This document shows, one piece after another, positions 1,732 to 63,500 of a DNA stretch of 64,000 bases (the first letter of the stretch is position 1; every line of letters begins with the position of its first letter). The translations under genes were made by a program, and so were the position numbers. The notes below the pieces were generated by a model. It saw only the letters and a program-made list of their open reading frames with translations, was not told the origin of the DNA and made no database searches. The stretch lies in the IMG/VR virus record IMGVR_UViG_3300027770_000027, positions 62,001 to 126,000 of that record; one strand, 5' to 3'.

Positions 1732-1788
1732 GTTTCTATTATGGCTGGGAATGCTGGGAAGGGAACGGCTGACTTTAACATTGAGGTC

Positions 1789-2032: not shown

Positions 2033-2057
2033 GGGAGCCCCCACACAGGAGCTCCCC
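2033..2057 (-). terminator. GC-rich hairpin after 2072-2719 (weak U-tract)
   Basis: GGGAGCTCC...GGGGCTCCC stem on the minus strand. Confidence 0.4.
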
Positions 2058-2071
2058 TATGATGAAAGTGA

Positions 2072-2719: not shown

Positions 2720-2757
2720 GTAATAATCTTAGCTGAAGTTGTGGGGAAGGGACCGAC

Positions 2758-2991
2758 TTACTTGCCGCAGTAGGCTTCGTCGTACACCGCGTTCATCTCC
2801 TGAGCCGCTTCGAGGCCTTCGCTATATCCTTTGTCTCGGCCAGCTTCAAAGGTCTTCTTCACCAGGGTGACCAGGGAACCGATGTACACGTCCCGGAAGT
2901 CCAGGCGATCCATATTACGGACCGCAATCGTTTCGATCTCGGTGTCGATGTGCTTCTGCAGGAGGGAAAGGATTTCGTCGTTCTTCATCAT
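2758..2991 (-). CDS. DUF6900-like small protein
   Basis: IETIAVRNMDRLDFRDV...FEAG matches the recalled family pattern TLETRNSDxLDFHDV. Confidence 0.65.
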   Translation of the reverse strand: MMKNDEILSLLQKHIDTEIETIAVRNMDRLDFRDVYIGSLVTLVKKTFEAGRDKGYSEGLEAAQEMNAVYDEAYCGK

Positions 2992-3029
2992 GTAATAATC
3001 TTAGCTGAAGTTGTGGGGAAGCTCCCGGC

Positions 3030-3212
3030 TTATCGGCCGAGGTTGTTTAGCTTGCGAATGGCGGCGTGAACTGCCCTAAGCTGGTTTACCAGGGGGTCTC
3101 CCAGACCGACGAGGCCTCCGTCTAGGACGATCTCGTCGATCTGCTTGTTGATGTCCCTGGACCGGTCCTTAAGTGCCGCCAGGGTCTTTGCTCTCTTCAT
3201 CTTGCTCATCAT
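3030..3212 (-). CDS. hypothetical protein (start revised to MMSKMK)
   Basis: TTCCCC-N11-TATGAT-N6-ATGATG. Confidence 0.75.
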   Translation of the reverse strand: MMSKMKRAKTLAALKDRSRDINKQIDEIVLDGGLVGLGDPLVNQLRAVHAAIRKLNNLGR

Positions 3213-3265
3213 GTAATAATCATAGAGCAGAATATGGGGAAGCGCAAGCGCGAATTTGCGTCTCC

Positions 3266-3478
3266 TCAATCAAGGGGGTATAGTTTCTCCTCCTGATCTT
3301 GGTGGGTCATATAAGCCACCGCGTCTGGGGAGAGTTGCGCATGGAGGAGGTCCTGCTCTAATTGCCACCCCATGTGAGGGCATATTCGGCGGGGCATGCC
3401 CTCCTGAGGTGGCGGACGTTCCTGGGCGACCTTCCGACCCATCGGGCCCCATTGCGCTGCGGGTGTATCATCTGACAT
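3266..3478 (-). CDS. hypothetical protein (start MSDDTP)
   Basis: TTCCCG...TATAAT-N6-ATG promoter at 3479-3510. Confidence 0.55.
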   Translation of the reverse strand: MSDDTPAAQWGPMGRKVAQERPPPQEGMPRRICPHMGWQLEQDLLHAQLSPDAVAYMTHQDQEEKLYPLD

Positions 3479-3588
3479 GCTATCATTATAGCGCAGGGTC
3501 ACCGGGAAGGCAATCGGAGCTTCGGGTTCCCCATGATTTTATAATTTGGTAGTTGCAAAAATTTTTTTTGTGATTAGACTTCCCCTAA

Positions 3589-7974: not shown

Positions 7975-8340
7975 TTACCGCTCCATGGAAGACATGAAAC
8001 GATCTTCGAAATCATTCATGTAGAGGAACTCTGGGTCATTCACCGGAGCATCAAAGGTTGGTTCAAACTTCCCGGCACTTTCAGGAAACTTAGCTTCTCC
8101 TGCCACTTTCCCGTTAATCAAGATACGGACACAACGAAGCTCGTTCGGGTGGCAGACATATTGCCGGGAGTTATTAACAACCCAATCCATCTCCCGCTTG
8201 AGGTCTTGCAGAGCACTGGCTCGGGTCATTCCCACGACCGAATAGATCGTATTCCAATGAATTACTCCAGTATCAGTGAAGACCTGGATCTGAAGGCGAC
8301 CGACGACTGTTTCTTCTGCGAATGATTGTGTTTCCATCAT
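7975..8340 (-). CDS. hypothetical protein
   Basis: Leaderless MM start behind a TTCCCC promoter. Confidence 0.8.
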   Translation of the reverse strand: MMETQSFAEETVVGRLQIQVFTDTGVIHWNTIYSVVGMTRASALQDLKREMDWVVNNSRQYVCHPNELRCVRILINGKVAGEAKFPESAGKFEPTFDAPVNDPEFLYMNDFEDRFMSSMER

Positions 8341-8382
8341 GTATATATCTTAGACGAGGTTGTGGGGAACCGCAAGGACTAC

Positions 8383-8601
8383 TTAAAGGACCACCTGCTC
8401 TGGCTCACTGGCCTGACACACTAGCTCGAGCACCTCCTCCATGTAGGAGACTCCTGCGGCGAAGTTCGCGCGGCCACGGTTGTCGGAGACGTACTGGAGG
8501 ATCACCTGGACTGCTTCAGCCACTGAGACGTGGTTGGCCTTGAGGATCTCTGCGGCGGCGGACTTGGCTGCTTCGGACTGGATGTATTCGTTCTTCATCA
8601 T
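8383..8601 (-). CDS. hypothetical protein
   Basis: MMKN start, own promoter, GC-rich codons. Confidence 0.8.
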   Translation of the reverse strand: MMKNEYIQSEAAKSAAAEILKANHVSVAEAVQVILQYVSDNRGRANFAAGVSYMEEVLELVCQASEPEQVVL

Positions 8602-8643
8602 GTTTATATCTTAGAGGAGGTAATGGGGAAACTCAACGCTTAC

Positions 8644-8904
8644 TTAGATGCCCTGGGCAAGTACGGCGTCCTCTGGGCTCTGCCAGTAGGTCTTCGAGAA
8701 GGTCACTATCCAGGTGTCTCTGTTCACTCGAAGGGCTTTGAACACCAGAGCATTGTCCTCATTGTCCAGCACCGTGATGGCATCCACTGAAGAGGGATGG
8801 AAGACGCGGACCTTGTTGACGATGTACTGGACGCGCTTGGCTTCCTTGGCGAGGACGTTGACTTGCTTCGTGCTGAGGACTCGTGTGTATGTGTTCTTCA
8901 TCAT
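8644..8904 (-). CDS. hypothetical protein
   Basis: MMKN start, own promoter. Confidence 0.8.
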   Translation of the reverse strand: MMKNTYTRVLSTKQVNVLAKEAKRVQYIVNKVRVFHPSSVDAITVLDNEDNALVFKALRVNRDTWIVTFSKTYWQSPEDAVLAQGI

Positions 8905-8913
8905 GTATATATC

Positions 8914-9135
8914 TTAGACGAGGTTGTGGGGAAACGCAAGGGCTTCTGCCTTCTCAAGTGCTTCTTCTCCATCCATTCCCAGCTTCTCGATCTGCTCGAT
9001 CGTGGCGTTGGCTGCTTCACAAGCGGACCTGCGGAGCTTTGCGGCTTCATCCCCCCAAACACCGTCCAGGTCGAAAGCCTGTTGGAGTTGCAAGGTGAGC
9101 TGCTCAAGGAGAATGTCGATCGTGTTTTTCATCAT
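8914..9135 (-). CDS. hypothetical protein
   Basis: MMKN start; C-terminus runs through the next promoter. Confidence 0.8.
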   Translation of the reverse strand: MMKNTIDILLEQLTLQLQQAFDLDGVWGDEAAKLRRSACEAANATIEQIEKLGMDGEEALEKAEALAFPHNLV

Positions 9136-25116: not shown

Positions 25117-25764
25117 TTAAGATTTCGTGTTACGAGCGCTCTTCTTAGCGGCCGGTGCTAGGACCATGTCTTCTCGGAGATCGCCTGTTTTAAGCGCGGT
25201 TTTGCGCGATTTCTTTAGTAGAACTGGAGGCTCCAAGAGAGCGGCACGCTGCACAAACTCTCTCACCTCTTCATCTTGGATTGCCTTCCCTTCATGCACT
25301 ATAGAGACCACTTCGCGATAGATCTTCACGGCATGTCGCTCAAAGAATCGATCTGCTTCTTCCTTACCCAAAGCATCATACCAACACTGAGCCTGGGGAA
25401 ATTGAGGAGCGGCGTGAAAGATGCATCCATTATGGAAATTACCAATCCAACACAGAAGAAAGATACCACCCTTAATATCTTTGTCCTTACACATAAATTC
25501 AAAGAACACAGCTCTTTCCTCTGGAGCCTTGCCTACATAGCGATTAAGCTTTGTAATATATTCTCCATCTAGGAATACAATAGACCTGCCCTTAGATGTA
25601 ACGTATTTCTTTAGAACTGAAACGTTATCATCATTCATATAAGCCTTACGAATAGTGGGCCAAGCTACTTTATTCTTGCGCATAGCAAAGAACGGAGAAG
25701 AGGCATTACCCTGACGGTTCATTGAAACCTTCTTATTCTTACGAGGATCTTTAGTGCTTATCAT
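25117..25764 (-). CDS. hypothetical basic protein
   Basis: Own TTGCGG-TTCCCC promoter. Confidence 0.8.
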   Translation of the reverse strand: MISTKDPRKNKKVSMNRQGNASSPFFAMRKNKVAWPTIRKAYMNDDNVSVLKKYVTSKGRSIVFLDGEYITKLNRYVGKAPEERAVFFEFMCKDKDIKGGIFLLCWIGNFHNGCIFHAAPQFPQAQCWYDALGKEEADRFFERHAVKIYREVVSIVHEGKAIQDEEVREFVQRAALLEPPVLLKKSRKTALKTGDLREDMVLAPAAKKSARNTKS

Positions 25765-25802
25765 ATTTATATCTTAAAGGAAGACTGGGGGAACCGCAAG
25801 AC

Positions 25803-29746: not shown

Positions 29747-29995
29747 CTATAAAGAGAATCTCTTTTGAAACGCCTGCATCAACAAATCATACATTGTCTC
29801 TCGGAATATTGAGAACTGCCAGGGCTCCTTGAGATACTGTGTTTCTGTAATCCATAGTTTAAGATTATGAGAGTCTCTAATAAACTGGACATAACTTTCA
29901 CCCTGGAAATTAAAACTCTCTGCAGTATTAAACAATGTTGTCAGACGATCCAGGACATCATTAAGCTCTTCACTGATAACATCATATCTATCCAT
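29747..29995 (-). CDS. hypothetical protein
   Basis: Own TTCCCC promoter. Confidence 0.75.
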   Translation of the reverse strand: MDRYDVISEELNDVLDRLTTLFNTAESFNFQGESYVQFIRDSHNLKLWITETQYLKEPWQFSIFRETMYDLLMQAFQKRFSL

Positions 29996-30052
29996 ACTTT
30001 AATACTACATGATGATGTGGGGAAGGTCACTGTTGTATTAACGAGAGTTGTA

Positions 30053-30238
30053 TTAAAGAATACAAGATCCGTGACGGCTTATAATATATGTTTTAATTCG
30101 ACACTGATGTAGATCTTCTAACCATTTGATAATATCTTTATCTGGTAATTGTCCAATAATCAAGGGAGGTATTACTTGAAAAGGAAGACTTCTTTTATCA
30201 GACTCCCATTCTATATTTTTAAGATGTGTCCAGTTCAT
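30053..30238 (-). CDS. hypothetical protein
   Basis: ATGA overlap with the phosphoesterase. Confidence 0.65.
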   Translation of the reverse strand: MNWTHLKNIEWESDKRSLPFQVIPPLIIGQLPDKDIIKWLEDLHQCRIKTYIISRHGSCIL

Positions 30239-30978
30239 TGACTATTGTCTATTGATTCAAATGAATCTTTATCAAGATTAAATAAGAGAACTTCTGCTAG
30301 ATGACAATCAACATTAATATTTGTAGAATTAGTTTCCGGATGTGTAGAAGTAATTATTTTTCTAGAAGGAGTATGTCCTACAATCTGAGTGACATTATCA
30401 AAGAATTCTGAATTGTGCCAATCATTCCAAAGTAATCCACCCTTCTTATGTCTTCCACCTCTTATACGATCTGCTGCATACAAACAAGCAATGTCCCAGT
30501 CTCCTGTAGGAGCCTTTAAGGTTCTCTTGGCGTTTTCTATATTATAATTAATAGTATCTACAGTAACTCCCTTAAGAGGATGTTCAAACCAAAGTTTTGT
30601 AATACCCGCATGAGAGAACCAATACTCTTTATCTTTACCTTTAATGGAATGAAAGTATAAGAGTTTTTCCCAATCATCTGGTGTGAGAATTTTATTAATA
30701 ATTTCATGTTTCCAGTAAGCAAAACCGGAACAATACAACTTACCAATAGGTACCATATAATGAATGTCATGGTTACCCATTAAATGAAGACGCTTGGGAT
30801 TGGATAAAGATTCTTTAAGCCAATGTGCCATTGCTTCTACTTCAATAGCATTATCATCAAAGTCATCAAAGTAATCTCCTATAAAAATAGTTTGATCCAC
30901 TTCTGGTTCTCTTTTGAGAGCTTGCTCTACCAGAGCTACTTTTTGATGGACATCTCCAATAATTAAAAATTGATTCAT
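30235..30978 (-). CDS. calcineurin-like metallophosphoesterase
   Basis: GDVH, GDYFD, GNHD, HAG, GHT. Confidence 0.9.
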   Translation of the reverse strand: MNQFLIIGDVHQKVALVEQALKREPEVDQTIFIGDYFDDFDDNAIEVEAMAHWLKESLSNPKRLHLMGNHDIHYMVPIGKLYCSGFAYWKHEIINKILTPDDWEKLLYFHSIKGKDKEYWFSHAGITKLWFEHPLKGVTVDTINYNIENAKRTLKAPTGDWDIACLYAADRIRGGRHKKGGLLWNDWHNSEFFDNVTQIVGHTPSRKIITSTHPETNSTNINVDCHLAEVLLFNLDKDSFESIDNSQ

Positions 30979-31395
30979 ATATTAGGAACAAAGAGCTTTA
31001 CACCAAGAAGACCAATCATGGACAGATTTTGTTTCAATTTTTGTTTCCTCTGCAAGTTGTTTTTGGGTCTCTTCTATTTCTAGATAGGTTTCTTCAAGGG
31101 CGAGGATGTCGTCAAAGGTCTCAATGTTGCTCATCATGTTCTAATAATAACTGCTCTTTAGGGGAAGAGCAACTAGATTTACATCTAGAACATTCCGAGC
31201 CCATTAATATGTCATACGCCTTGTCCAAGGCTAACTTATATTGTTCAAAGGTTTCCTCCAGCATAATTTTTTTCTCTCTAATTTCAAGCAAAGCTCTATA
31301 TAATAATATTGCTTGAACCGATACCATTAACAACCAAAAGAACGCTAGAAGAGCATCAAGAGTAAACATAACAATACTATATACCAAAGCAATAA

Positions 31396-31426
31396 AAAAG
31401 GTCTAGACTTTAGATCTAGACCTTTT
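31396..31426. terminator. intrinsic terminator, possibly bidirectional
   Basis: AAAAGGTCTAGA-N7-TCTAGACCTTTT. Confidence 0.8.
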
Positions 31427-31449
31427 CAAATTCTGGGAGAGAATTTTAT

Positions 31450-31614
31450 TTAGAAACCCTTAGCGGCTGCTGTGTTCTTTTTAGACTTTTTACAAGCCGG
31501 ACATGTACATTTTTCATTTTTACATTTCTTACCCACTGTGCAAGGGCAAGGTGTTTTGGCTTCGTGAACAATTTGATAAGCTTGTTCTAATAGAATAGTG
31601 TCTTTGGTTCTCAT
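31450..31614 (-). CDS. MRTKDTILLEQAY-leader peptide with Cys/Lys-rich metallothionein-like body (start revised)
   Basis: CPC..C...CTC..C in the C-terminal 35 aa. Confidence 0.75.
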   Translation of the reverse strand: MRTKDTILLEQAYQIVHEAKTPCPCTVGKKCKNEKCTCPACKKSKKNTAAAKGF

Positions 31615-31618
31615 AAAA

Positions 31619-31798
31619 TTACATTTGTTCTCTGCGCCACCAATTTTCAAAATCAATTTGATCTTGGGATTTTACATCAGTGGGTTTTACATCAGCAAGT
31701 TTTGCTGCGGGAGGTTTAATAGGAGCAACAACTTCAGGAGTTTTGGTGTCGACAACTGGAGGAAGCTCTACTGGAGTTAAATTGTTATCAGCTGGCAT
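31619..31798 (-). CDS. 59-aa Pro-rich protein (MPADNNLTPVELPP...)
   Basis: Not in the track; TAAGTA box upstream. Confidence 0.65.
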   Translation of the reverse strand: MPADNNLTPVELPPVVDTKTPEVVAPIKPPAAKLADVKPTDVKSQDQIDFENWWRREQM

Positions 31799-31822
31799 AT
31801 GATATACTTACCCTAAAAGGGG

Positions 31823-31903
31823 TACGGACGGAGAGACTCGAACTCTCATGCCTTTCGGCGCCAGTTCCTAAGACTGGAGTGTCTGCCATTCCACCACGTC
31901 CGC
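31823..31903 (-). tRNA. trnL: tRNA-Leu(TAG)
   Basis: Cloverleaf, CCAGT-CTTAGGA-ACTGG, long V-arm, no encoded CCA. Confidence 0.95.
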
Positions 31904-31925
31904 TTTTATGTATTTATCCAGAAAA

Positions 31926-32016
31926 TGGTACACCGGGTGGGAATTGAACCCACACCTAGGAGTTATCTACTCAGTACGTGTATAAGACGTCTTGCTCTAC
32001 CGTGAGCTACCGGTGC
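31926..32016 (-). tRNA. tRNA with TAT anticodon (Ile?) and long variable arm
   Basis: ACGT-CTTATAC-ACGT; V-arm GAGT..ACTC; canonical T-arm; ACCA end. Confidence 0.8.
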
Positions 32017-32036
32017 CTGTTGGGTTAAGTATTGTT

Positions 32037-32411
32037 ATGATTAGATTGGTTAAAGCTATCGGAGAAAAATTAAAAGGCAAGCCATTGGCAATGAGATCTC
32101 CTCATTGGGCAACTACTAGACGTCATCACTTAAAAGATCATTCTACATGTGCAGCTTGTGGTGGTACAGAAAAATTACAAGTACACCACAAACAGCCTTA
32201 TCATCTACATCCAGATTTAGAATTGGAACCTACTAATTTGATTACCTTGTGTGAATTTGGAGATATTGATTGTCATTATAATATAGGTCATCATAGAGAC
32301 TGGAAATCTTTTAATCCAAATGTAGTACAAGATGCTGCCGCCAACCTAACAATTATTAACGAAAAGAAAGTGCGCCCGGTTGGGATTGAACCAACGACCA
32401 AGGAATTATGA
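32037..32411 (+). CDS. HNH endonuclease (start revised to MIRLVK)
   Basis: CAACG..L.VHH...NLITLC....CH; TAAGTA box upstream. Confidence 0.9.
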   Translation: MIRLVKAIGEKLKGKPLAMRSPHWATTRRHHLKDHSTCAACGGTEKLQVHHKQPYHLHPDLELEPTNLITLCEFGDIDCHYNIGHHRDWKSFNPNVVQDAAANLTIINEKKVRPVGIEPTTKEL

Positions 32412-32443
32412 GTTCCCTGCTCTGACCACTGAGCTACAGGCGC
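32371..32443 (-). tRNA. tRNA-CAT, probably Ile2 (lysidine type)
   Basis: GGGAA-CTCATAA-TTCCT; body resembles bacterial tRNA-Ile2. Confidence 0.85.
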
Positions 32444-32484
32444 TTATGATAAAATTATAATATATCGTAAGAGGGAAATCAACC

Positions 32485-32668
32485 AGGATGATGTGTTTTT
32501 CTCGCGAGTGTCTGTCACATCGTTCAACGGCCGACCAGCTTGAGCCAATCCATTACCGTCTAAGACCAGTGTTTAAGAAACACCCCTTTCACTAGGGTGT
32601 ACAGCTAGAGGTACTAACTTCAAACTGGACTAACTCTCTCTAGGTTGTCCGGCTAAGCCGGCTCGGAT
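32485..32668 (-). ncRNA. candidate structured RNA of about 185 nt
   Basis: ORF-free and GC-rich; several hairpins with G-U pairs on the minus strand; ATAAATA upstream. Confidence 0.55.
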
Positions 32669-32669
32669 T

Positions 32670-32900
32670 CTATTTATCTAGTTGTTCTACAATATCTTCT
32701 TCTGAAAAAAGACCAGTAGGAGTAAACCCCAAATCTGCTTCAAGTTCTTCAAATCTATAAAGAAATCCTTTAGAGAGATCTTGCTCATCACTATCTTCTT
32801 CAATCTCTCCGGTATACAGACCTTCTCCTCGATATGAGGCGTCTGGCCACTTAGGATCTACATAGTCAATATAATAACGTTTACCGGTTACTGGAATCAT
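32670..32900 (-). CDS. hypothetical acidic protein
   Basis: ORF track. Confidence 0.75.
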   Translation of the reverse strand: MIPVTGKRYYIDYVDPKWPDASYRGEGLYTGEIEEDSDEQDLSKGFLYRFEELEADLGFTPTGLFSEEDIVEQLDK

Positions 32901-32935
32901 ATTTATATATTATAAGAACATTTAAAATATATCAA

Positions 32936-33202
32936 CTATGCTTTGGGTTTTCTTTTAAGAAACTCTGAAACAACTTTGTCTGCTGCTTTGAATTCTGTTG
33001 TATGATTAGCAACTGGCTCGATGTAACGATCCCAAAAGACTTCTGTATCAGGTTCACTACCGAACCTATTCTTGTAATCTACAACAAGAAAGCAACCTTC
33101 CTTTATGTTCACTCTAAACGCCTTCGTTTCTGGACCATCATATACACATTCAGTGCGGACATCCAACAATTGCTTACCTGAAGTTTGAGTTTGCTTTGTC
33201 AT
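32936..33202 (-). CDS. hypothetical protein
   Basis: ORF track. Confidence 0.7.
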   Translation of the reverse strand: MTKQTQTSGKQLLDVRTECVYDGPETKAFRVNIKEGCFLVVDYKNRFGSEPDTEVFWDRYIEPVANHTTEFKAADKVVSEFLKRKPKA

Positions 33203-33226
33203 GTTTAATACTTATAGAAAATAAAT

Positions 33227-33313
33227 CCAACGGCGCTCATGTCTCTGTCTCCCAACCACGGGACACACCAGAGAAATTATACATGGGTCGATGGTATAAT
33301 GAGATTCCGTTGG
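33227..33313 (-). ncRNA. candidate three-way-junction RNA
   Basis: CCAACGG/CCGTTGG and CTCAT/ATGAG closing stem with two inner hairpins. Confidence 0.55.
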
Positions 33314-33432
33314 CCACCAGAAGAGCTCACCGGGTCTTATATGTTACTGGTTAGATAACTTTTGTCCCTTTAAGTGATTTTTTTAAGTGAATCAACACCG
33401 GATCTTGTTTTAAGTGAAAGCCAACACTAAGC

Positions 33433-33532
33433 TTTTCCAGGTTGGATTCGAACCAACGGCGAGCGCTTTGTCCCGGCATTTTGGCCCTTAACCATGAGGG
33501 AGCACTAGATCTACCAACTGAGTTACTGGAAA
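33433..33532 (-). ncRNA. tRNA-like RNA with expanded, anticodon-less arm
   Basis: Perfect acceptor stem and T-arm GTTGG-TTCGAAT-CCAAC; extra hairpin replaces the anticodon loop. Confidence 0.75.
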
Positions 33533-33536
33533 ATTA

Positions 33537-33634
33537 TGGAGACTAGGTTGGTCATTTCATCCAACATCCTGTACTGGTTCCTCAGAGTTTTATACTTAAA
33601 CTACTAGTCATTTGAAATTAAAGTGTCTAGTCTC
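33537..33634 (-). ncRNA. candidate structured RNA ending in CCA
   Basis: GAGACTAG/CTAGTCTC closing stem; motif shared with 34991-35029. Confidence 0.5.
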
Positions 33635-33641
33635 TCCCAGT

Positions 33642-33708
33642 GTCACACAACTACTTTACCAGATTAATCCGGTTACTCACTCCACATTGTGTAGAGGGCA
33701 TGTGTCGC
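33642..33708 (-). ncRNA. candidate small three-way-junction RNA
   Basis: CTCTACA/TGTGGAG and ACCGGA/TCTGGT hairpins within an ACACA/TGTGT stem. Confidence 0.45.
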
Positions 33709-33715
33709 AAAAAAA

Positions 33716-33803
33716 TGGTCGCCTAGGCCGGACTCGAACCGGCACGAGGAGTGCTCCTCGACAGATTTTAAGTCTGTTGTGTCTGCCATTTCACCACTAG
33801 GCG
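33716..33803 (-). tRNA. trnL: tRNA-Leu(TAA)
   Basis: Cloverleaf, long V-arm, CCA. Confidence 0.95.
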
Positions 33804-33806
33804 TGT

Positions 33807-33818
33807 CTATCAAAGATC
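33807..33818 (-). promoter_or_regulatory. boxA-like element GATCTTTGATAG
   Basis: Just downstream of a TTCCC promoter; identical copy at 35052-35063. Confidence 0.6.
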
Positions 33819-33871
33819 ATTTATTATGTTAATATCTTAACATCACTTACTGGGAAGGTCACCTGGGAAAT

Positions 33872-33945
33872 TGGTAGTCCGCCCAGGGCTCGAACCTGGA
33901 ATAAGAGATTCAAAATCTCCTGTGTTACCATTACACCAACGGACT
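33872..33945 (-). tRNA. trnQ: tRNA-Gln(TTG)
   Basis: Cloverleaf, CCA. Confidence 0.95.
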
Positions 33946-33948
33946 ATA

Positions 33949-34024
33949 TGGTCGTGATGGAGAGACTCGAACTCTCGATACCTTGGTCCCAAACCAAGTG
34001 CCATAGCCGCTAGGCGACATCACG
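33949..34024 (-). tRNA. trnP: tRNA-Pro(TGG)
   Basis: Cloverleaf, CCA. Confidence 0.95.
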
Positions 34025-34035
34025 TTATCTAAAAA

Positions 34036-34109
34036 TGGTTGACCATGAAGGTAACGCTCCTTCGTCCTTCGATTATCAGTCGAGAGCTCTACTTTTAAGC
34101 TAATGGTCA
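34036..34109 (-). tRNA. trnI: tRNA-Ile(GAT) with non-canonical D- and T-loops
   Basis: T-loop AGCGTTA, D-loop AAAAGTA; CCA. Confidence 0.85.
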
Positions 34110-34112
34110 ATA

Positions 34113-34187
34113 TGGAGCCAACAGTCGGGATTGAACCGACGACCGGTGGTTTACAAAACCACTGCTCTACCACTGAGCTATGCTGGC
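34113..34187 (-). tRNA. trnT: tRNA-Thr(TGT)
   Basis: Cloverleaf, CCA. Confidence 0.95.
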
Positions 34188-34191
34188 AATG

Positions 34192-34264
34192 TGGAGCCTA
34201 AGGGATTCGAACCCTTCACCTATAGCTTGCAAAGCTACCGCTCTACCGAATGAGCTAAGACCCC
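34192..34264 (-). tRNA. trnA: tRNA-Ala(TGC)
   Basis: G3-U70 pair; no encoded CCA. Confidence 0.95.
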
Positions 34265-34270
34265 TTAAAA

Positions 34271-34344
34271 TGGTGGACCATGAGGGTAACGCTCCCTCTT
34301 GATTCGGTTAAAAGCCGAGTGCTTTACTTTTAAGCTAATGGTCC
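34271..34344 (-). tRNA. trnK: tRNA-Lys(TTT) with non-canonical D- and T-loops
   Basis: Same scaffold as tRNA-Ile(GAT); CCA. Confidence 0.85.
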
Positions 34345-34348
34345 GAAA

Positions 34349-34424
34349 TGGTTGCACAGGTCGGATTCGAACCGACGATCTTTTGGTTATGAGCCAAATG
34401 AGTTGACCTCTTCTCTACCGTGCG
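34349..34424 (-). tRNA. initiator-type tRNA-Met(CAT)
   Basis: C1-A72 mismatch; anticodon stem has only two G-C pairs. Confidence 0.85.
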
Positions 34425-34431
34425 ATTAAAA

Positions 34432-34506
34432 TGGCTCCTGGAGTAGGACTCGAACCTACAACGTCCTCGTTAACAGCGAGGTGCTCTACCATTGAGCTAT
34501 CCAGGA
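34432..34506 (-). tRNA. trnN: tRNA-Asn(GTT)
   Basis: Cloverleaf, GCCA end. Confidence 0.95.
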
Positions 34507-34510
34507 ATGT

Positions 34511-34580
34511 AAGACCCGAGAGGAATTGAACCTCTAAACAGAAAGACTCATCTATCTGCCGACTTCCTTTCGGCGGGTCT
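34511..34580 (-). ncRNA. tRNA-like RNA with a 4-nt loop instead of an anticodon loop
   Basis: AGACCCG/CGGGTCT acceptor; AGAGG-TTCAATT-CCTCT T-arm; CAGATAGA-TGAG-TCTTTCTG arm. Confidence 0.75.
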
Positions 34581-34591
34581 ATTAAAATTAT

Positions 34592-34855
34592 TTATAGTTC
34601 ATAGACAGCATTGCTGTCAGATTCTTCACAAAACTCAACAAATCGTTTAAAATCTTCAACTGCATCAAGAGTACTTTCAAATTGATCCCAATAGCTGACA
34701 CCGTCCTGGTGTTCCGCTTCTGTAATATACTCTGCCAATAGATCTTCTAGAGGTTCTTTCCAAGAGACAACAGTCATGGCTGCATCAATAAAAGAAGTCT
34801 TCAAAGGATGTTCAAGGGTGTTCATGTCGTGGTGATTAGGATTGGTGTTTTTCAT
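34592..34855 (-). CDS. hypothetical acidic protein within the tRNA cluster
   Basis: Own TTCCC promoter. Confidence 0.75.
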   Translation of the reverse strand: MKNTNPNHHDMNTLEHPLKTSFIDAAMTVVSWKEPLEDLLAEYITEAEHQDGVSYWDQFESTLDAVEDFKRFVEFCEESDSNAVYEL

Positions 34856-34898
34856 TGTTTATATATTAGAGGTTTATTATGGGAAGGTCACTAAAAAA

Positions 34899-34984
34899 TG
34901 GTGGGAGATGTGGGTAACGATCCCACCGAGCATGAATGCGCCAGATTTACAGTCTGGACCGTCTCCTTAACGGTATACTCTCCC
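34899..34984 (-). tRNA. trnY: tRNA-Tyr(GTA), atypical T-loop ATCGTTA
   Basis: CCAGA-CTGTAAA-TCTGG, V-arm, CCA. Confidence 0.9.
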
Positions 34985-35127
34985 AAAAACTCCTAGGGGT
35001 TGGTCTCATTATTAAGAGGTGCCCTAGGACATGATGAAAACTGCTATGTAACTATCAAAGATCTAACTTAATTATGGTTTAAGTATACCAGCAGTCATGG
35101 GGAACTGCTCCTGGAAATTTATTTATC

Positions 35128-37030
35128 CTACACGTTGCTGATTTCCAAATTAATTTCTTCATCACTTAGTCGGCAATAAAGAGTTTCACCTGTGTCTGGA
35201 CAAATTTGAATCTTTACAAAACCTTCAGCTACCATGTATTTCAGATTTCGCATAATTGCTTCGCGAAGATATTCTTTATATTCTTTGTCGGTCATCATCA
35301 TTTCATCGTCTTTCATTGTTAGAATCTTAAAGGATCTTACCGGGAAAGGCACCTTGTTATTCAAGGCGGTGAGAACTGAAACGATGAGGAAATTTTTTAT
35401 CTATGCAAATAAATTCAATAGGCCCAAATCCTCTTTGTACTGCTAGGTACTCTTTATTGATCAGGGTAATTACTTTGTAATGAGTAACTTCTTCTTCTTC
35501 CTTGGGGGAATTCTTATCGGAAGCAAGTGCCGGAATAAAAACTGCGGCGGCTAATAGTAAACTTAAAGTCAATTTCATAGGTTGTTTTTATTATAGTCTT
35601 TTATTTGTTCTTTGCAAGCTTCTTTTCTCGCCGTTGATCTAAAAAGGCGATTATTTCTACACCAAGAACAACGACCATGATTGCGGCAAGTCCAGTCAAA
35701 AGTCTTACTGGTACGTCCATAATAGGGTTTGCGGTTTTCTTTACCATGTAAAATAGATTTATCTAAGCTCATGTAAAAATTACCGGATGATGTGCTTCTT
35801 TTTTAGCTAAAAAACAAGGTACACAAGATACTCTATTTTCTACACGATAACGGGCAAATCTTTTATCTAGACGCAATCCACAATGAACACAGGATTCATC
35901 AACAATTACCGGTTCATCATTAAACATTAGAACTTGTTTGTTCTTTTGGTTTTTGCTCATTTTTTTTCGACCAGTCTATTTCAGACCAATTTTCTACTAT
36001 TTTTTTAAGATTTTCTTTACGGCGTTTACTTCCTTTTCCGTTTGACATAATCTATTCAACCAAAACAGCGGCATTGAGTCGATCAACCTCTGAAAGAATA
36101 GCACCGTCAACGTCTTCTACAACTTCACCGATTACTCGCTGAGTACTTTCTGGGTGATAAGAATAGAATCCTTGATCATTGCGAACAATTTCACCTAGTA
36201 CAGAGCCATTACGGTTATCATAGACGTCAAAACGACTTCCTGTCTTAGTTTGGATATGGATTAGTTTATTCATGTGTATTTATTTTATATGTAGTTTAGT
36301 AAGAGTCACCGGAGTCTGAAGAATTAATACAATCTAATGCAAGCCACACATCAGAACTTATTTTAGGAGTTGTTGTTACAAGAGTTGCAGTAGCCCCGGA
36401 TGCAAATGATAGAGTGTATAGATGTTTGTTGTTACGTGTGAAGGTTCCTAGCAAAACATTTGTAGTAGTTCTGTAAAAATTGTAGGTGAGATATGTATCA
36501 TATTGTACATATATGGTAGAAAGGGAAGGGAATCTCATCTTATATTTAGGAAATAATGAATATAGTACAGAGAATAAGAATACTAAAGCCTAAACTTAAA
36601 CATCCCAGGATTACTACTTTTTGTTTATATGAAAACATTTCTGTATTTCTATAAGGTAAAGGGGAATAAATAGGCCGGCCGTTGTCATAACTAATTAAAT
36701 ATTTCATAGGTGATTACCATTTTTAAGTTCTTCCAAATAACCACACAGGTGTAATACTTTATAGAAAGCTTTTTTATTATTTTGCTTCTTATTAAAACGG
36801 GCAGTATCTGGACAAATATGTTCAGCCATGGCTGTATGAGGGCCTCCTGCAAAAATACCCGCCGGAATAGTAACCTTGCACAAAGTAGAACCTCCTAGAT
36901 GAGACAATCTTTTAGATTGGTCCATGCGTTTTTGTCCAAATGGAGGTTCTACGTAACGACGCCAATGGCGAAAGGTGATCTTCCACCCGTGTTTCTTCAA
37001 GCTATTGTAGTCTAGTGGTTGCTTGCTCAT
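35128..37030 (-). other. small hypothetical CDSs (35128-35316, 35357-35578 with signal peptide, 35575-35772, 35769-35960, 36052-36273, 36296-36538, 36704-37030)
   Basis: ORF track with overlaps; 35575-35772 has a CRNHG.C.WC motif. Confidence 0.7.
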
Positions 37031-37711: not shown

Positions 37712-37981
37712 ATGAAATTTAATGAACTAGTCAATTTTTTATTAGAAAAATACAGTAAACCATGTACTAAAGTAACCGGGCAACAATCTTCTACTCGAGA
37801 TGATAAAAAATATATGAGATGTGCTAAAGTAGATGGTAAACTTAAAAGAGTTCATTATGGAGACCCTAATATGAGAATTAAGAAGTCTAACCCTAAAAAC
37901 CGCAAAAGTTATAGGGCTAGACATCATTGTAGCTCAGCCAAACCAGGAACTCCCGAATATTTTAGCTGCAAGAACTGGTAA
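37712..37981 (+). CDS. small basic late protein (DUF5754/DUF6321-like) with MKFNELVNFLLE leader
   Basis: V.YGD..M....RKSYRARH.C...SC..W; TAAATA upstream. Confidence 0.8.
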   Translation: MKFNELVNFLLEKYSKPCTKVTGQQSSTRDDKKYMRCAKVDGKLKRVHYGDPNMRIKKSNPKNRKSYRARHHCSSAKPGTPEYFSCKNW

Positions 37982-39074
37982 AGGCTTTCCAATACTTGTG
38001 GGGAGAGATTTCTTTGCCATCTAGTATAGCAAATGCTATGCCACTACAATCGGAAAGATATTGCAAGATCTTTTGAGCCTTTCCCTTTCGATCTAAAGTA
38101 ACAAAATCTGGTTTGGTGAAATATATTTTAATTCTGTTAATTTCAATATTAATTTTATTCATCTTCAAATATAACTCATCCATTAAAGATTCCAGAGTTA
38201 CAACTAACTCCCAATCAAAATTAGCAGCTAACAATGCTTCAAAGTTCTCTCTTTGAGGTTGTCCATACTCTACAAATAAATCAAATAAATGATCTACGGT
38301 CTTTACACCTGTAAAGATTCGATGTAGCTGAAGATAACGAAGAGTCTTAATCTTCTTCAAGATTTGGCCACCACCATATCCAGGAGCATCATCATAAATA
38401 ACCACTCCTTCAATGTCAGCCAGTGGCTCAATGCGCTTTTTAATATCTTCAATACTACCCCCTAAACTAATACCGTAAGACTTGGGTCGTTCAACACCCA
38501 TTTCTTTTGCATAGGTGTCAAGGTTGTGTTGGTTAACATATGAATAATCTGGGTGATAAACCATTCCAATCAACCACAAGGTGGGTTCGGTAGATTCATT
38601 CAATACAATTCTATTAGTTGGTGTAGTCCACTCAAACAGTAAAGTATATAAACCACAATCCAACCATTCCAACCATTCATTATCAAAAACTTTGGGATAC
38701 TTCTTCTTGAGAAATTCAATTTCATGACCATTTTCAAGCTGAGAGGCATCAACTGTGCCTCGGGTGCGAATAATAAGTTCACCCCTGTATCTGCTAACAA
38801 TTAAACAAGACCCATCAATTTTCTGAATTGCTCTAACACCATCTTCTGGATTTAGAGGTTCAAATTCTGGCTTCTCACCATAGTTCATGAACTTCCGGAA
38901 ACCTAGAGACACTGGCATCATATCAGACTTGCGCCATATAGAAGAACGGAAGAACTTATTTTCTTCGGTCCATTCTACACCCATGTTCTTGGGGGTAACC
39001 AGAACACATTCATCCCCTGCAATGACACAATCCTTGAGGTGAAATTGGTCTGAATTGGGAAGTTCTATTTTCAT
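37962..39074 (-). CDS. RNA ligase, T4 Rnl1-like
   Basis: KF.NYGE, KIDGS (motif I), LFEW, EGVVI, KIK. Confidence 0.85.
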   Translation of the reverse strand: MKIELPNSDQFHLKDCVIAGDECVLVTPKNMGVEWTEENKFFRSSIWRKSDMMPVSLGFRKFMNYGEKPEFEPLNPEDGVRAIQKIDGSCLIVSRYRGELIIRTRGTVDASQLENGHEIEFLKKKYPKVFDNEWLEWLDCGLYTLLFEWTTPTNRIVLNESTEPTLWLIGMVYHPDYSYVNQHNLDTYAKEMGVERPKSYGISLGGSIEDIKKRIEPLADIEGVVIYDDAPGYGGGQILKKIKTLRYLQLHRIFTGVKTVDHLFDLFVEYGQPQRENFEALLAANFDWELVVTLESLMDELYLKMNKINIEINRIKIYFTKPDFVTLDRKGKAQKILQYLSDCSGIAFAILDGKEISPHKYWKAFTSSCS

Positions 39075-42509: not shown

Positions 42510-43547
42510 TTAGTCTTTGTAATTTTGATTAATAATTTTTACACTTAACATCTTATTGAGAGTTTCGCTGTATCTCAAATCTCCATTTAAATTATAACCT
42601 CGAATAACAATACCTTCTGCGGGTTTACCATTTTTAACATAAGTCATTTCATTGGCCAGAGTTTGTAATTTTTCTAACGTCAAATTTGGGATTTCGCTTG
42701 CTGTAAAAGATTCTACAAATGGTACAGAAAGACACATATGTGAAAAATCTGATTTCATTACATCTTGAGCTTCTTTATATACTCCAGTTGACAAGTCTTT
42801 TACATTAAAATGAAAGAAAGAAAGCTGCTGAAGGCCAGCTGGATTTCCTTGAATACCTGGTCCACAAATTTCTCCCTGCACTGCGGTGCCTAGTGGTAGA
42901 TAACTTTCAATTTGATATTTCTTAGCCATTTGCCAGTAAACACTGTCTGGTGTCTCCCTTAGCTCTAAGTTACGAGAACATACTTTAAAGTTTCCTTCGT
43001 GATCTTTGATGTAAGTAACAGAAGTCCCATCCATCTTGAGGGTAACACGGACAAACGCAGATGCTTTTAATTCTTCCAATACTTTAATATTAGACAAAAG
43101 GTTGTCTTCATCTGTTCTGCTTATGAATTGAGTAGGAAAATTACCAGCTACTTCCCCTCGTAAATTAGCTGGGATGGGTTTTTCGTATTTGGTAATACCT
43201 AACATCCCTGCAATAGAGGTGTCTTCTTCTGGATCATCTGAATGGTCCCAGATTTCTTGAGCACTAATTAGAGATCTAGGAAAAATAAGTCCTTGAGAAA
43301 CCGTACCTCGAAGCTTAACGGTTTTTACTCGAATAGGTTTGGTAGGATCATTCTTATCCCACAGAAATTCATTCCATACTCTCGGCTGGAGTACGGTATC
43401 AATAGGTACAAAAATTACTCCATCTCCTACCTTATATTCTCCCTTTTTGATAACGCTCTGCCACCCCTGCACTCGAGCAATCTCAATACGGTCTGCTCCT
43501 TCGATAGGAAGGATTTCTGTGATGGTTTCATATGACGCAAGTTCCAT
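42510..43547 (-). CDS. RNA ligase, DRB0094 family with N-terminal OB domain
   Basis: PIEGADRIE, SQGL, KMDGTS, QGE..GPGIQGN, EGIVI, K.IN. Confidence 0.9.
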   Translation of the reverse strand: MELASYETITEILPIEGADRIEIARVQGWQSVIKKGEYKVGDGVIFVPIDTVLQPRVWNEFLWDKNDPTKPIRVKTVKLRGTVSQGLIFPRSLISAQEIWDHSDDPEEDTSIAGMLGITKYEKPIPANLRGEVAGNFPTQFISRTDEDNLLSNIKVLEELKASAFVRVTLKMDGTSVTYIKDHEGNFKVCSRNLELRETPDSVYWQMAKKYQIESYLPLGTAVQGEICGPGIQGNPAGLQQLSFFHFNVKDLSTGVYKEAQDVMKSDFSHMCLSVPFVESFTASEIPNLTLEKLQTLANEMTYVKNGKPAEGIVIRGYNLNGDLRYSETLNKMLSVKIINQNYKD

Positions 43548-60520: not shown

Positions 60521-63500
60521 TTATAACCAATTAATTTTATATAAAGATGTATATACTGGACTTATTTTTTCAATATTTTTTCTAATAGCATCTTCTATTA
60601 AACTTCTTACTTCTGGTGAGACTTCTAGGTTGTGAATATTAATGTTGTAATACTTGCTCTTACTTCCGGGAAGTTGCATTTGAAACCAGTGTTTAATTTC
60701 TTCTACATAGTTGCGACCACCAGATTTCATATTCCATATTAAATCCGATCTTTCATCTGAATATTTAGAGGAGAAATATAATTGTTCAACGTCGCCAGAT
60801 TGCAGAGCTTTGTTGTAAATTTTTAAATCTGAAACCTGCCCTATAAATTTATAAGCATTTTGAATTCCTATAAGATCATTTAAAGTACTATTTTTTATAG
60901 AATCTGCTCCTAACAAAAATGAAGAGCGGTATGTGTAACATAAAAATTTATTTTCCGGAATATTGACCCGATCTACTTCAACAGAATCTATATAAAATTT
61001 TGCAACATTTGAGGTAGCATCAAAAGTAAGCACAAAATGATGCCACCCACTATGCAAGGCTGCAGCATCATATGTCAATGAAAGATATTCTGGAGAATTT
61101 CCGGTAGGTTCTGCAACCTTCATTCTCCAACTTAAATTTTTGCTTTCTGCACCAAATTTGCGCAACAATTGATATCCAGTAAAGTCTCCATTTGCAGCAA
61201 ATTTAAAATTGTTAGGATTTTTTAAATTTTGTAAATTTGTTAAATCTATTCGAGATATAATATCTCCATTTAAATCCATTAATATTAATTCATTGTCTCT
61301 GGTATCTATAAGAACCAATAGATCTTTAAATTCTTGTTTTTTACAAGTCTTTATAGGAGTTTTGAGAAAATTAATATATCGATATCTTTCTGTAATTTTT
61401 TCGCAAGGATCTTCTTCCGTGCCGGCTCTTTTACCAATTCTAAATGTTGTAAAGGCTCCCTTTGGATCTAATTTAGAAATTTTATCCTGATCATGTAAAA
61501 TCCAAATATTATTTGAAGCGTCACAAGTAATTTGTTGGGTGGGTCCTACTGTTGCAAAAATAGAAGGAACCCCGTGACCAGAAGATTTACTGAATGGAGT
61601 TTTATATAAATTATTGCCCAGAGATTGCCAAATGTTTCCATTGTTATCAATAACAGAAGCATTTCCTAAAATTTCTCTTATGATAATTTTTTGACCGTGA
61701 AACTGAGCTTGTGTTTTGGGTACTCTGAACAATTCAATTCTCTTGATGTCCTGGCTAGAAAGCAAGTAATCCGCTCCTTGATAGAGTTTGCCTTCAGAAT
61801 TGAGGATAACCACTATTTGTCTATCTGGAATCAGTAGATATAACTTTAAGTCTTCATCAACTTCAATTTGGGTTACTCCATAATATTTGTCTGTTGTTCC
61901 TATTAGTCTTCCTTCAACGTCATATTTGGTACCTATCCCTGCAGTGGTATCAAATATCCAGGAACTAAAATCTGGATATCTAATAATAAACAAATTATTT
62001 GTAGAAGATTTTACTGTCGTTTGATTTATATTTGTTATTTTTAAATTATAATTTAGGTTATAACATTGACCATTAATAGAATCTACTAAAGATAAGATAG
62101 GTGCTGTATTTGCGGTATCATTTACTAACCCATAACCACTATTATAAAAATTACCAAATATTTGATATCCGTGAATATCTGCCCAGTCTTCTGTTTTTAA
62201 CCAAAGAGAAGTGGTAAAGTGAGTAGTTTCTAGTAAAGAAGTTCTAGAGGGAAACACTGCATGAGTAGTACCATCTAAATCCCAAAAAGAAGTGTCTTGA
62301 TCCTTTAGATTTTCTGAATATATTAAACCATTGTTGTGATAATCTGATTGGTCTCTCAGAGGATTAGTGTTCCACGCAGTTATTTCTAGAGTCTTAGAAC
62401 CTGTACTAGCACCTCTCACATTGTTTAAAAATGGTAAATAAGATTTACTAGTTTCTAGTCCAGCATGATAATATCTGTAAAATGCGCCAGGTTCCAAAAA
62501 CATAGTTGATGGTCTGTCTATAATAAAATTCTCCCCAGCATCAAGTCTTGAATTGTATACTTCTGTCTGGGCGGATAATGCTTGGTCTAGGGTATAATAA
62601 GCAGAATTGTAAAATCTGTCCATCCATTGTTTTGTTCCTGTGTTGGAACCGGATAACCAAGCACATAACCAGGTAGTAGAAGTTTTTGAAATACTAGCCG
62701 GCTGTAAAAACCCTGGTAACTTGTTGCTATAATCTGTTTGTTTTAAATATATGCGATCTGATATATAAGGATGATGAGAAGCAATGGCTCCATCTTCTAT
62801 AAAACCAGCATTATTTAAAAGAGTTCTTTCTGCAGTTGGCGGAAAACTAAAAAATGTTTCCCGATCTCTTTCGAATTTTTTTTCTAGAGTATGGGCTTCA
62901 TATCCGAGGTAGAGAGATTCAAGTCCGCCTCTTTGATTAGTACCTGCAAAAATGGCATCATAAGATCTATGAACCCCTTTTAATCCATCCACATAATCCG
63001 TATTAAAACTATAATTGTATTCTGGAGTTTGATAATTTTTTAATCCGTGAATATGTAAATCATATATGGCGGTATTTTCTTTAATAGTGGGAAATTCTAG
63101 AGGAAACATGCCCATATAATTTTGAGCATATAAAGCATTGCTGGTAGTCGCGTCTGGAAGCAATTCTTGTTGATAATCCAATTTATTAATTAAGTATCGA
63201 GTTAAATAACTGTCAGTTACATGGGAAGCATCTGGTAAATCTTTTTTAAATGAAACAAATTTTAAGTAAGAATCTGTTGGAAGGTTAGAACCAGCATTTA
63301 AAGCCAATTGTTGTAAATTAAATTCTGGAGAATCTAAAGATTTTTTTACTATCCAAGTATAGTTTGTATTTGGCTTAAATAAATAAATTCCTTCATCTCC
63401 TAAAATGTAAGCAAATTTTTGAGAATAGCTTTCTGGATAAATCCGAGCTTTAAAGGAAACAGATTTTGATAGGTTATTCCAGGTTAAAACAAATTTATGA

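What the first reader, a model, noticed from the sequence alone, without database searches (positions are those of the whole stretch)
32485..32668. Candidate 185-nt late ncRNA with a possible pseudoknot
Seen on the minus strand after ATAAATA: hairpins CCGGC/GCCGG, CTAGAG/CTCTAG, ACACCC/GGGTGT, GACGGT..GATTGGC/GCTGGTC..GCCGTT (G-U rich) and GATGTG/CACATC. A loop CCAGT is complementary to the downstream ACTGG. The region is GC-rich amid AT-rich DNA. I cannot assign a family.
Basis: seen in the sequence. Interest (0 to 1): 0.6.

Follow-up and report, generated by a model that had tools for sequence, protein, structure and literature searches.

The report
Pseudoknotted small RNA in phage tRNA island
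A 173-base stretch between a small gene and a tRNA gene of an uncultured freshwater T4-like phage encodes a conserved, folded RNA with a pseudoknot that matches no described RNA family; it sits where phage T4 keeps its own two still-unexplained small RNAs.

Summary
Folding energy alone is not better than shuffles. Six sequence variants from lake-metagenome phage contigs keep the element at 84-95% identity, against 67-81% for the adjacent gene. No frame is open in any of them. They support four helices, including the pseudoknot, with one compensatory pair each (95.8% of cells paired; slid controls 31-44%). The ACACCC/GGGTGT hairpin is an insertion specific to this phage, in a pseudoknot loop. 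No Rfam family matches, and a model of the element does not match T4 rnaC/rnaD. The element always lies on the tRNA strand inside a tRNA island, near a 76-aa ORF. The ATAAATA motif is a plausible late promoter. The genome has a gp55 homologue. The motif is about 8-fold enriched 5-10 nt before ORF starts, and the nameable ORFs are tail genes. It also precedes a tRNA and this element at the same spacing. An RNA-library contig covers the region but cannot show ends or strand. Best reading: a new small structured phage RNA of unknown trans function, occupying the same genomic niche as T4 RNAC/RNAD.

The parts
32489..32661 (-). Conserved core of the RNA element: 173 nt here, 155-158 nt in relatives
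   Evidence: Same block in six variants. It is 84-95% identical, against 67-81% for the adjacent ORF DNA, and has no open frame. Model R1 scores 166-213 bits on the homologues.
32671..32678 (-). GATAAATA, a late-promoter-like motif (NATAAATA) 9 nt before P1. It overlaps the stop codon of orf76.
   Evidence: Genome-wide enrichment and fixed spacing before ORFs. Tail genes lie behind it. A gp55 homologue is present. The motif is conserved behind orf76 in all lineages and also lies 7 nt before tRNA-Leu.
32649..32661 (-). P1 hairpin CCGGC-UUA-GCCGG
   Evidence: The stem is kept and the loop varies (3, 7 or 10 nt) in relatives.
32605..32643 (-). S1 of the pseudoknot: CUAGAG (32638-32643) with CUCUAG (32605-32610). 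Its loop holds the 5' strand of S2.
   Evidence: helix 1: 92.9% paired; pair 47-82 is A-U in 4 variants and G-C in 2.
32564..32630 (-). S2 of the pseudoknot: GUCCAGUUUG (32621-32630) with UAAA-CA-CUGGUC (32564-32575). It crosses S1.
   Evidence: helix 2: 98.3% paired; the terminal pair is A-U:2, G-C:2, G-U:2. RNAalifold finds the core helix independently. Duplex energy is -8 to -11 kcal/mol.
32580..32600 (-). Extra hairpin ACACCC-UAGUGAAAG-GGGUGU, inserted in loop 3 of the pseudoknot
   Evidence: Present only in this phage and its identical copies; absent from the five other variants.
32526..32560 (-). P4, a bulged hairpin: outer GACGGU/GCCGUU, inner GAUUGGC/GCUGGUC
   Evidence: Helix 4 (inner) is 100% paired, with G-C to C-G in 2 variants. 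Helix 3 (outer) is 86% paired, with one position mismatched in 5 of 6 variants.
32490..32521 (-). P5 hairpin GAUGUG/CACAUC with a 20-nt loop
   Evidence: helix 5: 100% paired; G-C becomes A-U in L003.
32501..32508 (-). Palindrome CUCGCGAG in the P5 loop
   Evidence: Invariant in 5 of 6 variants; L086 keeps UCGCGA. Predicted loop-loop dimer gain is -17 to -19 kcal/mol. It occurs only twice in the 227-kb genome.
32454..32482 (-). Sigma-70-type promoter TTGATT-17-TATAAT directly behind the element, in front of tRNA-Met
   Evidence: (5 sites in the window against 0.54 expected). The same promoter stands between the element and tRNA-Arg in L033/L053/L087.
32370..32443 (-). tRNA-Met (CAU), next gene downstream on the same strand
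32670..32900 (-). orf76, a small acidic protein. It is always within 1.2 kb of the element, upstream or downstream.
   Evidence: No Pfam or PHROG family. The Atlas model is a small beta-barrel, which is a lead only.
32936..33202 (-). orf88, a second small ORF of the same module
   Evidence: homologues lie next to orf76 in the L033/L053/L051 lineage.

Best explanation
The stretch is a gene for a small structured RNA, read from the minus strand inside the tRNA island of a distant T4-like freshwater phage.

**Fold (supported by comparison of six variants).** A 5' hairpin (P1) comes first. It is followed by an H-type pseudoknot, in which the loop of hairpin S1 pairs with a strand downstream of it (S2). 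Then come a bulged hairpin (P4) and a terminal hairpin (P5), whose large loop shows an invariant palindrome. This phage carries an extra hairpin in a pseudoknot loop.

**Synthesis (inferred).**
- In this phage, transcription starts 3-4 nt before P1, from the NATAAATA motif recognised by the phage's gp55-type late sigma factor. Read-through from the orf76 unit is also possible.
- The transcript runs on towards tRNA-Met.
- Cutting at the tRNA 5' end and trimming back to P5 would give the 3' end.
- In relatives the element follows a tRNA by 7 nt, so the same tRNA-processing nucleases would set it free.

**Action (inferred, weakest step).** The compact fold would make it a stable trans-acting RNA that binds a protein or itself, as is suspected for T4 RNAC/RNAD and for the ROOL/GOLLD RNAs that occupy the same genomic niche. 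Its cellular target is unknown.
For: - **Conservation.** The element is more conserved than the flanking ORF and no frame is open. Indels of 1 nt and about 21 nt occur.
- **Structure.** 95.8% of cells are paired, against 31-44% when the partners are slid. Four pairs in four helices changed on both sides. RNAalifold recovers P1, S2, P4 and P5.
- **Strand.** 28 of 216 paired cells are G-U. These would be A-C on the other strand (derived).
- **Context.** The element is always on the tRNA strand inside a tRNA island. It lies 7 nt behind tRNA-Ser(gct) or tRNA-Gly(tcc) in relatives, and it is followed by a sigma-70 promoter.
- **Late promoter.** A gp55 homologue is present. 28 of 109 ATAAATA copies lie just before ORFs, mostly 5-10 nt from the ATG. 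The nameable ORFs are tail genes. The same motif and spacing occur before tRNA-Leu(tag) and before P1 here and in L003.
- **RNA library.** A 2431-nt contig at 100% identity spans 31817-34247 at depth 58.6. Downstream contigs have depth 3.6-9 and the upstream one 19.
- **Precedent.** T4 has rnaD and rnaC right behind tRNA-Arg, next to a homing endonuclease. Their roles are unknown and they are late RNAs (PMC3014915, PMC9697503).
Against: - There are only six variants from four lineages of one phage clade. Covariation amounts to one double change per helix and cannot reach statistical weight, and the shuffle control is not a probability.
- Single-sequence folding is not better than chance.
- No read-level data exist. 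Contigs cannot show strand, ends or level, and DNA carry-over in the RNA library is not excluded.
- The late-type motif is missing before the element in the L033/L053/L087 and L055/L086 lineages, so timing is not a conserved property.
- No target, partner or activity is known.
Confidence: 0.6

Rival explanations
1. It is a cis-acting end structure of the tRNA/orf76 transcription unit. It would act as a stabiliser, processing signal or insulator placed before the next promoter, with no trans-acting role.
For: The element always ends just before a new start: a sigma-70 promoter in the window and in L033/L053, and the orf76 ATG in L055/L086. P5 is followed by a U run in L033/L053 and in L003.
Against: A block of 155-173 nt with a pseudoknot and many invariant unpaired bases is far more than a terminator needs. 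There is no U run in the window or in L055/L086. The terminator scan finds nothing on the minus strand here.
Confidence: 0.17
2. It is the RNA partner or operator of the small orf76 protein. The two would form an RNA-protein complex, or the protein would regulate itself through the RNA.
For: orf76 lies within 1.2 kb of the element in every lineage although their order changes. Relatives in runs X4 and X5 lack tRNA-Met, the element, orf76 and orf88 together (joint 32338 to 33624). The Atlas model of orf76 is a small beta-barrel resembling Tudor/SH3/PemK folds.
Against: All carriers are close relatives, so linkage may be plain synteny. The joint loss is of one contiguous block. The fold matches are weak (TM 0.52-0.60) and give no function. 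In L033/L053 a promoter, a tRNA and orf88 lie between the two.
Confidence: 0.12
3. It is a self-cleaving or otherwise catalytic RNA that helps to cut the tRNA-island transcripts.
For: It has a pseudoknotted fold with many invariant unpaired bases, and it lies among RNAs that need cutting.
Against: No known ribozyme family of Rfam matches, even at E up to 10. Host tRNA-processing enzymes suffice for such operons.
Confidence: 0.04
4. It is a DNA-level site, such as a homing-endonuclease target, a recombination site or a protein-binding site, and not an RNA.
For: An HNH endonuclease ORF lies 80 nt away on the other strand. The conserved palindrome CTCGCGAG could bind a dimeric protein. The block is missing in some relatives.
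Against: Compensatory changes and many G-U pairs point to a single, specific strand. The HNH gene is not next to the element in the other lineages.
Confidence: 0.04
5. It is a chance set of hairpins in an intergenic spacer.
For: The MFE z-scores are -0.57 and -0.69.
Against: Conservation exceeds that of the coding flank, and helices are kept through changes.
Confidence: 0.03

Closest known systems
Phage T4 small stable RNAs RNAC (species 1) and RNAD (species 2)
   Same: They are small RNAs (139 and 119 nt) encoded on the tRNA strand at the end of the phage tRNA cluster, beside a homing endonuclease gene. They are classed as late RNAs (PMC9697503) and their function is unknown (PMC3014915). The host phage here is a distant T4 relative, with gp43/44/46/47/55 homologues.
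   Different: There is no sequence or model similarity. T4 rnaC ends in a tRNA-like T arm (GGUUCGAAUCC), which this element lacks. This element has a pseudoknot and a palindromic loop.
ROOL and GOLLD RNAs
   Same: They are structured RNAs of unknown function encoded in phages and prophages, often near tRNA islands. GOLLD was first found in lake metagenomes. Both have pseudoknots and self-interacting kissing loops (bioRxiv 10.1101/2024.12.08.627333).
   Different: They are 3-5 times larger. Their Rfam models do not match here. Self-association of this element is only suggested by its palindromic loop.
Candidate structured RNAs predicted in bulk from IMG/VR (Fremin et al. 2023, PMC10690425)
   Same: They come from the same data source and are the same kind of object: a conserved structure in an uncultured phage.
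   Different: I could not check whether this element is among the 8495 candidates, because no supplementary tables are held.

Membership tests
Any Rfam 15 family | Score at or above the family's gathering threshold | tested here: not met
   Only tRNAs pass in the window. At E up to 10 over 32300-32800, nothing credible overlaps the element.
T4 RNAC/RNAD | Location in the phage tRNA cluster, on the same strand as the tRNAs | tested here: met
T4 RNAC/RNAD | Sequence and structure homology | tested here: not met
   Model R1 run with filters off on the T4 region gives no match on rnaC or rnaD. The alignment shows no shared blocks.
T4 RNAC/RNAD | tRNA-like 3' domain (T arm), as in rnaC | tested here: not met
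   The T arm is seen in T4 rnaC. It is absent here, and ARAGORN and Rfam call no tRNA-like element within 32489-32661.
T4 RNAC/RNAD | Accumulates as a stable small RNA late in infection | not testable with these tools
   Only contigs of one RNA library are available.
ROOL/GOLLD | Match to the family model; size 500-800 nt | tested here: not met
   The element is 155-173 nt.
ROOL/GOLLD | Homo-oligomer held by kissing loops | not testable with these tools
   An 8-nt palindrome in the P5 loop gives a predicted dimer gain of -17 to -19 kcal/mol. That is a nearest-neighbour estimate only.
H-type RNA pseudoknot | Two helices in crossing order, each kept through sequence change | tested here: met
   Helices 1 and 2 each have one pair with changes on both sides. 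The loops are 7 nt, about 9 nt, and 29 nt (window) or 7-8 nt (relatives) (read).
T4-type late promoter (gp55-dependent, TATAAATA) | Motif about 6 nt before the start, a gp55 homologue in the genome, and the motif in front of virion genes | tested here: inconclusive
   - The exact 8-mer is not enriched.
- NATAAATA is enriched about 8-fold before ORFs, and the nameable ones are tail genes.
- A gp55 homologue is present.
- The site here is GATAAATA.
- No transcription start has been mapped.
Intrinsic terminator | G+C-rich stem followed by a U run | tested here: not met
   No site on the minus strand here. A U run follows P5 in only some relatives.
   The supported fold is four short helices and a pseudoknot.

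The most novel reading that the evidence does not exclude
The element is a miniature, self-associating phage RNA. The invariant palindrome in the P5 loop would let copies pair loop to loop into dimers or larger assemblies, making it a small counterpart of the ROOL/GOLLD RNA cages that also sit in phage tRNA islands. Alternatively, it is a decoy that draws a host tRNA-directed defence enzyme away from the phage's tRNAs.
Probability: 0.12. Interest if true: 0.75.

Novelty: new variant of a known kind. Interest (0 to 1): 0.5.

Why it matters
Small RNAs in phage tRNA clusters have been known since the 1970s (T4 RNAC/RNAD) and, in giant form, since ROOL and GOLLD. None has an assigned function.

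This element offers a second, unrelated example in a distant T4 relative. It is short, has a clear pseudoknotted fold and a defined promoter-like motif, and has a constant small protein neighbour. That makes it a compact object for asking what such RNAs do.

The genome-wide NATAAATA analysis also suggests that this phage group makes nearly leaderless late mRNAs, which would be unusual for T4-like phages.

Tried and rejected
- **Single-sequence folding.** Not significant on either strand. The long MFE helix GAGUUAGUCCA/UGGAUUGGCUC is not kept in relatives, because one strand varies while the other is invariant.
- **Exact-pattern scans.**
  - Scans of IMG/VR, JGI metagenomes and GTDB genomes returned many extra loci.
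  - All were chance hits in coding DNA. The 14 loci are one protein-coding family sharing both anchors; I took it for thymidylate synthase ThyX from its peptide motif, from memory and untested.
  - Model R1 scored none of these loci.
- **Weak R1 hit in L063/L064** (17 bits). It is an intrinsic terminator plus the start of an RNA ligase gene.
- **Search for further relatives.** The search for related loci with Rnl1 gave only the same two contigs. The phage collection has no close relative; the best Rnl1 identity is about 30%.
- **Homology to T4 rnaC/rnaD.** None.
- **Late promoter.** I first rejected it because exact TATAAATA is not enriched. I reversed this after the NATAAATA analysis.
- **Antisense targets.** Complementarity of 10-mers to the rest of the genome is at chance level.
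- **Prior report.** The supplement of PMC10690425 is not held.
- **Neighbouring proteins.** Atlas look-ups of orf76 and orf88 gave weak fold leads only.
- **P1 as an anticodon-arm mimic.** In some relatives P1 resembles the T4 tRNA-Ser anticodon arm. The loop is not conserved, being 3 nt in this phage, so I did not adopt this reading.

Full report
**Setting.** The window is bases 62001-126000 of a 227,352-base IMG/VR virus record with 36% G+C.
- The genome has homologues of T4 DNA polymerase gp43, clamp loader gp44, gp46/gp47 and the late sigma factor gp55 (41% identity over 86 residues).
- The window also encodes Rnl1- and Rnl2-type RNA ligases, a metallophosphoesterase and tail-fibre-like proteins.
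- No cultured phage is close. It is therefore an uncultured, distant T4-like phage from lake water.
- The finding lies on the minus strand between a 76-aa ORF (32670-32900, stop TAG at 32670-32672) and tRNA-Met (32370-32443). This is inside an island of 12 tRNA genes, all on the minus strand.

**Observation.**
- The element has 48.6% G+C, against about 38-40% around it.
- Thermodynamics alone gives no support: the MFE z-score is -0.57 on the minus strand and -0.69 on the plus strand.

**Relatives.** The upstream ORF led to a diverged copy, L003, with 57% protein identity. Exact-pattern scans built on blocks shared by the two sequences found further copies.
- The sources were IMG/VR and JGI lake metagenomes, and contigs fetched through orf76 homologues.
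- In all there are six distinct variants in four lineages: the window (identical in L002/L049), L003, L033/L034/L054, L053/L087/L088, L055/L050, and L086.
- Every other pattern hit was a chance match in coding DNA and was not scored by the covariance model R1.
- Two specific patterns found nothing true in 185,579 prokaryote genomes.
- The family is therefore rare and, so far, confined to one clade of freshwater phages.

**Non-coding, and selected as RNA.**
- Between lineages the element is 84-95% identical, while the DNA of the adjacent ORF is 67-81% identical.
- Every frame on both strands has stops in every variant.
- Variants differ by a 1-nt indel and by the presence or absence of a whole hairpin of about 21 nt.

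**Supported structure.**
- On the six-sequence alignment, the structure S1 + S2 + P4 + P5 has 95.8% of cells paired, against 31-44% when partners are slid by 1-3 columns.
- One pair in each of four helices changed on both sides:
  - A-U to G-C in S1;
  - G-U/A-U/G-C at the end of S2;
  - G-C to C-G in inner P4;
  - G-C to A-U in P5.
- An alternative register for the end of S2 fits slightly worse.
- RNAalifold, which cannot draw pseudoknots, independently returns P1, the long-range helix S2, P4 and P5.
- S1 and S2 cross, so together they make an H-type pseudoknot. The hairpin specific to this phage (32580-32600) sits in its third loop, a place where an insertion is tolerated.
- Twenty-eight of the 216 paired cells are G-U. 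These would be A-C mismatches on the plus strand (derived). The functional strand is therefore the tRNA strand.

With only four lineages this evidence is consistent but not statistically strong, and the tool's shuffle control is explicitly not a probability.

**Context.**
- In the L033/L053/L087 lineage the element begins 7 nt after tRNA-Ser(gct). It is followed by a sigma-70-type promoter and tRNA-Arg(tct).
- In L055/L086 it begins 7 nt after tRNA-Gly(tcc) and is followed after 17 nt by the orf76 start.
- In the window and L003 it follows orf76 directly.
- In the window, TTGATT-17-TATAAT (32454-32482) stands between the element and tRNA-Met. Such sites are ten times more frequent in the window than in shuffles.
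- The element therefore closes one transcription unit of the island and is always co-oriented with tRNAs.
- orf76 is within 1.2 kb in every lineage.

**The "late" claim.**
- Exact TATAAATA is not enriched, and I first discarded the idea.
- The shorter ATAAATA, however, occurs 109 times in the genome, and 28 of these lie in the 60 nt before ORFs of 90 aa or more, which is about 3% of the sequence space. Permuted 7-mers reach 3-15%.
- The motif ends mostly 5-10 nt (mode 6) before the ATG.
- The ORFs behind it that PHROGs can name are a minor tail protein, a tail sheath stabiliser and a tail fibre or baseplate protein. The window's large ORFs at 49100 (566 aa, no family) and 60521-64000 (tail-fibre-like, Laminin_G_3) also carry it.
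- The same motif lies 7 nt before tRNA-Leu(tag) (31911-31917), 9 nt before P1 of the element (32671-32677) and 8 nt before P1 in L003.
- In the other lineages it stands at the same place behind orf76 but is followed after 6-7 nt by the ATG of a protein gene.
- Because it precedes non-coding genes at the same spacing, it marks a start of transcription rather than of translation. Together with the gp55 homologue, it is best read as this phage's late promoter.
- Between the window and L003 the motif is kept although the ORF's reading frame over it differs (GAT AAA TAG against ATA AAT AAT). This argues for selection on the DNA signal.
- Timing itself is not measured. The lineages where a tRNA precedes the element have no such motif there.

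**Expression.** One metatranscriptome run holds the region at 100% identity.
- Its contig 31817-34247 has depth 58.6 and the one at 31333-31768 has 52.
- Contigs at 29800-31346 have 3.6-9, and the one at 34218-35700 has 19.
- This uneven depth is what RNA would give. However, contigs show no strand, ends or local level, and DNA carry-over is not excluded.

**Comparison with known RNAs.**
- No Rfam family matches.
- T4 places rnaD and rnaC directly behind tRNA-Arg and next to the homing endonuclease segB. They are late RNAs of unknown role (PMC9697503, PMC3014915).
- The arrangement here is alike, including an HNH endonuclease ORF nearby. But R1 finds nothing in the T4 region, the sequences do not align, and T4 rnaC has a tRNA-like T arm that is absent here.
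- ROOL and GOLLD share the niche (phages, tRNA islands, lake samples) and use self-pairing kissing loops. They are far larger and unrelated.
- The P5 loop carries the palindrome CUCGCGAG, which is invariant in five variants and reduced to UCGCGA in L086. The predicted loop-loop dimer gain is -17 to -19 kcal/mol. This is a lead, not a result.

**Verdict.** Timing and function are still inferred. It is a new RNA family of a known kind: small structured RNAs of phage tRNA islands. It is known so far from six variants only.

Noticed in passing
whole genome G000; in the window e.g. 25764-25771, 31911-31917, 32900-32907, and before the ORF starting at 49100: NATAAATA ends 5-10 nt (mode 6) before the ATG of many ORFs, among them the large tail genes. 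If it is the gp55-type late promoter, the late mRNAs of this phage would be leaderless or nearly so, unlike those of T4.
   Followed up: partly
window 31992-32411 (+): An HNH endonuclease-like ORF (HH..CH..HH motifs) lies on the opposite strand between tRNA-Ile and tRNA-Met. Its 3' end overlaps tRNA-Met antisense. This recalls segB in the T4 tRNA cluster.
   Followed up: partly
window 32339-33623: Contigs of related phages in two other freshwater runs (X4, X5) join 32338 to 33624 with 8 other letters between. They thus lack tRNA-Met, the element, orf76 and orf88 as one block.
   Followed up: no
window 31926-32016; L003 2902-2991: tRNA-Ile with anticodon TAT is 90-91 nt long, an unusual size for an Ile tRNA.
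   Followed up: no
window 34039-34109 (-): Rfam calls a twelfth tRNA (50 bits) that ARAGORN does not list.
   Followed up: no
window 32907-32935 (-): A sigma-70-like site TTGATA-17-TAATAT ends 6 nt before the ATG of orf76, which would also give a leaderless mRNA.
   Followed up: no
window 1-3500 and 8001-9000: Stretches of 51-55% G+C in a 36% G+C genome. They hold only short ORFs without Pfam families.
   Followed up: partly
window 30235-30978, 37962-39074, 42510-43547 (-): A metallophosphoesterase, an Rnl1-type RNA ligase and an Rnl2-type RNA ligase flank the tRNA island. This looks like an RNA-repair gene set.
   Followed up: no
G000 C1:39411-39835 (outside the window): ARAGORN calls a 425-nt tmRNA with an odd 33-residue tag. 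It is unverified and may be a false call.
   Followed up: no
L053 5064-5080, L055 727-743 (P1 of relatives): In four variants P1 is CCGGU-CUUGAUA-GCCGG (CUAGAUA in the L033 variant), a 5-bp stem with a 7-nt loop. It resembles the anticodon arm of T4 tRNA-Ser (CCGGUCUUGAAAACCGG). The loop is not conserved in the window or in L003.
   Followed up: partly
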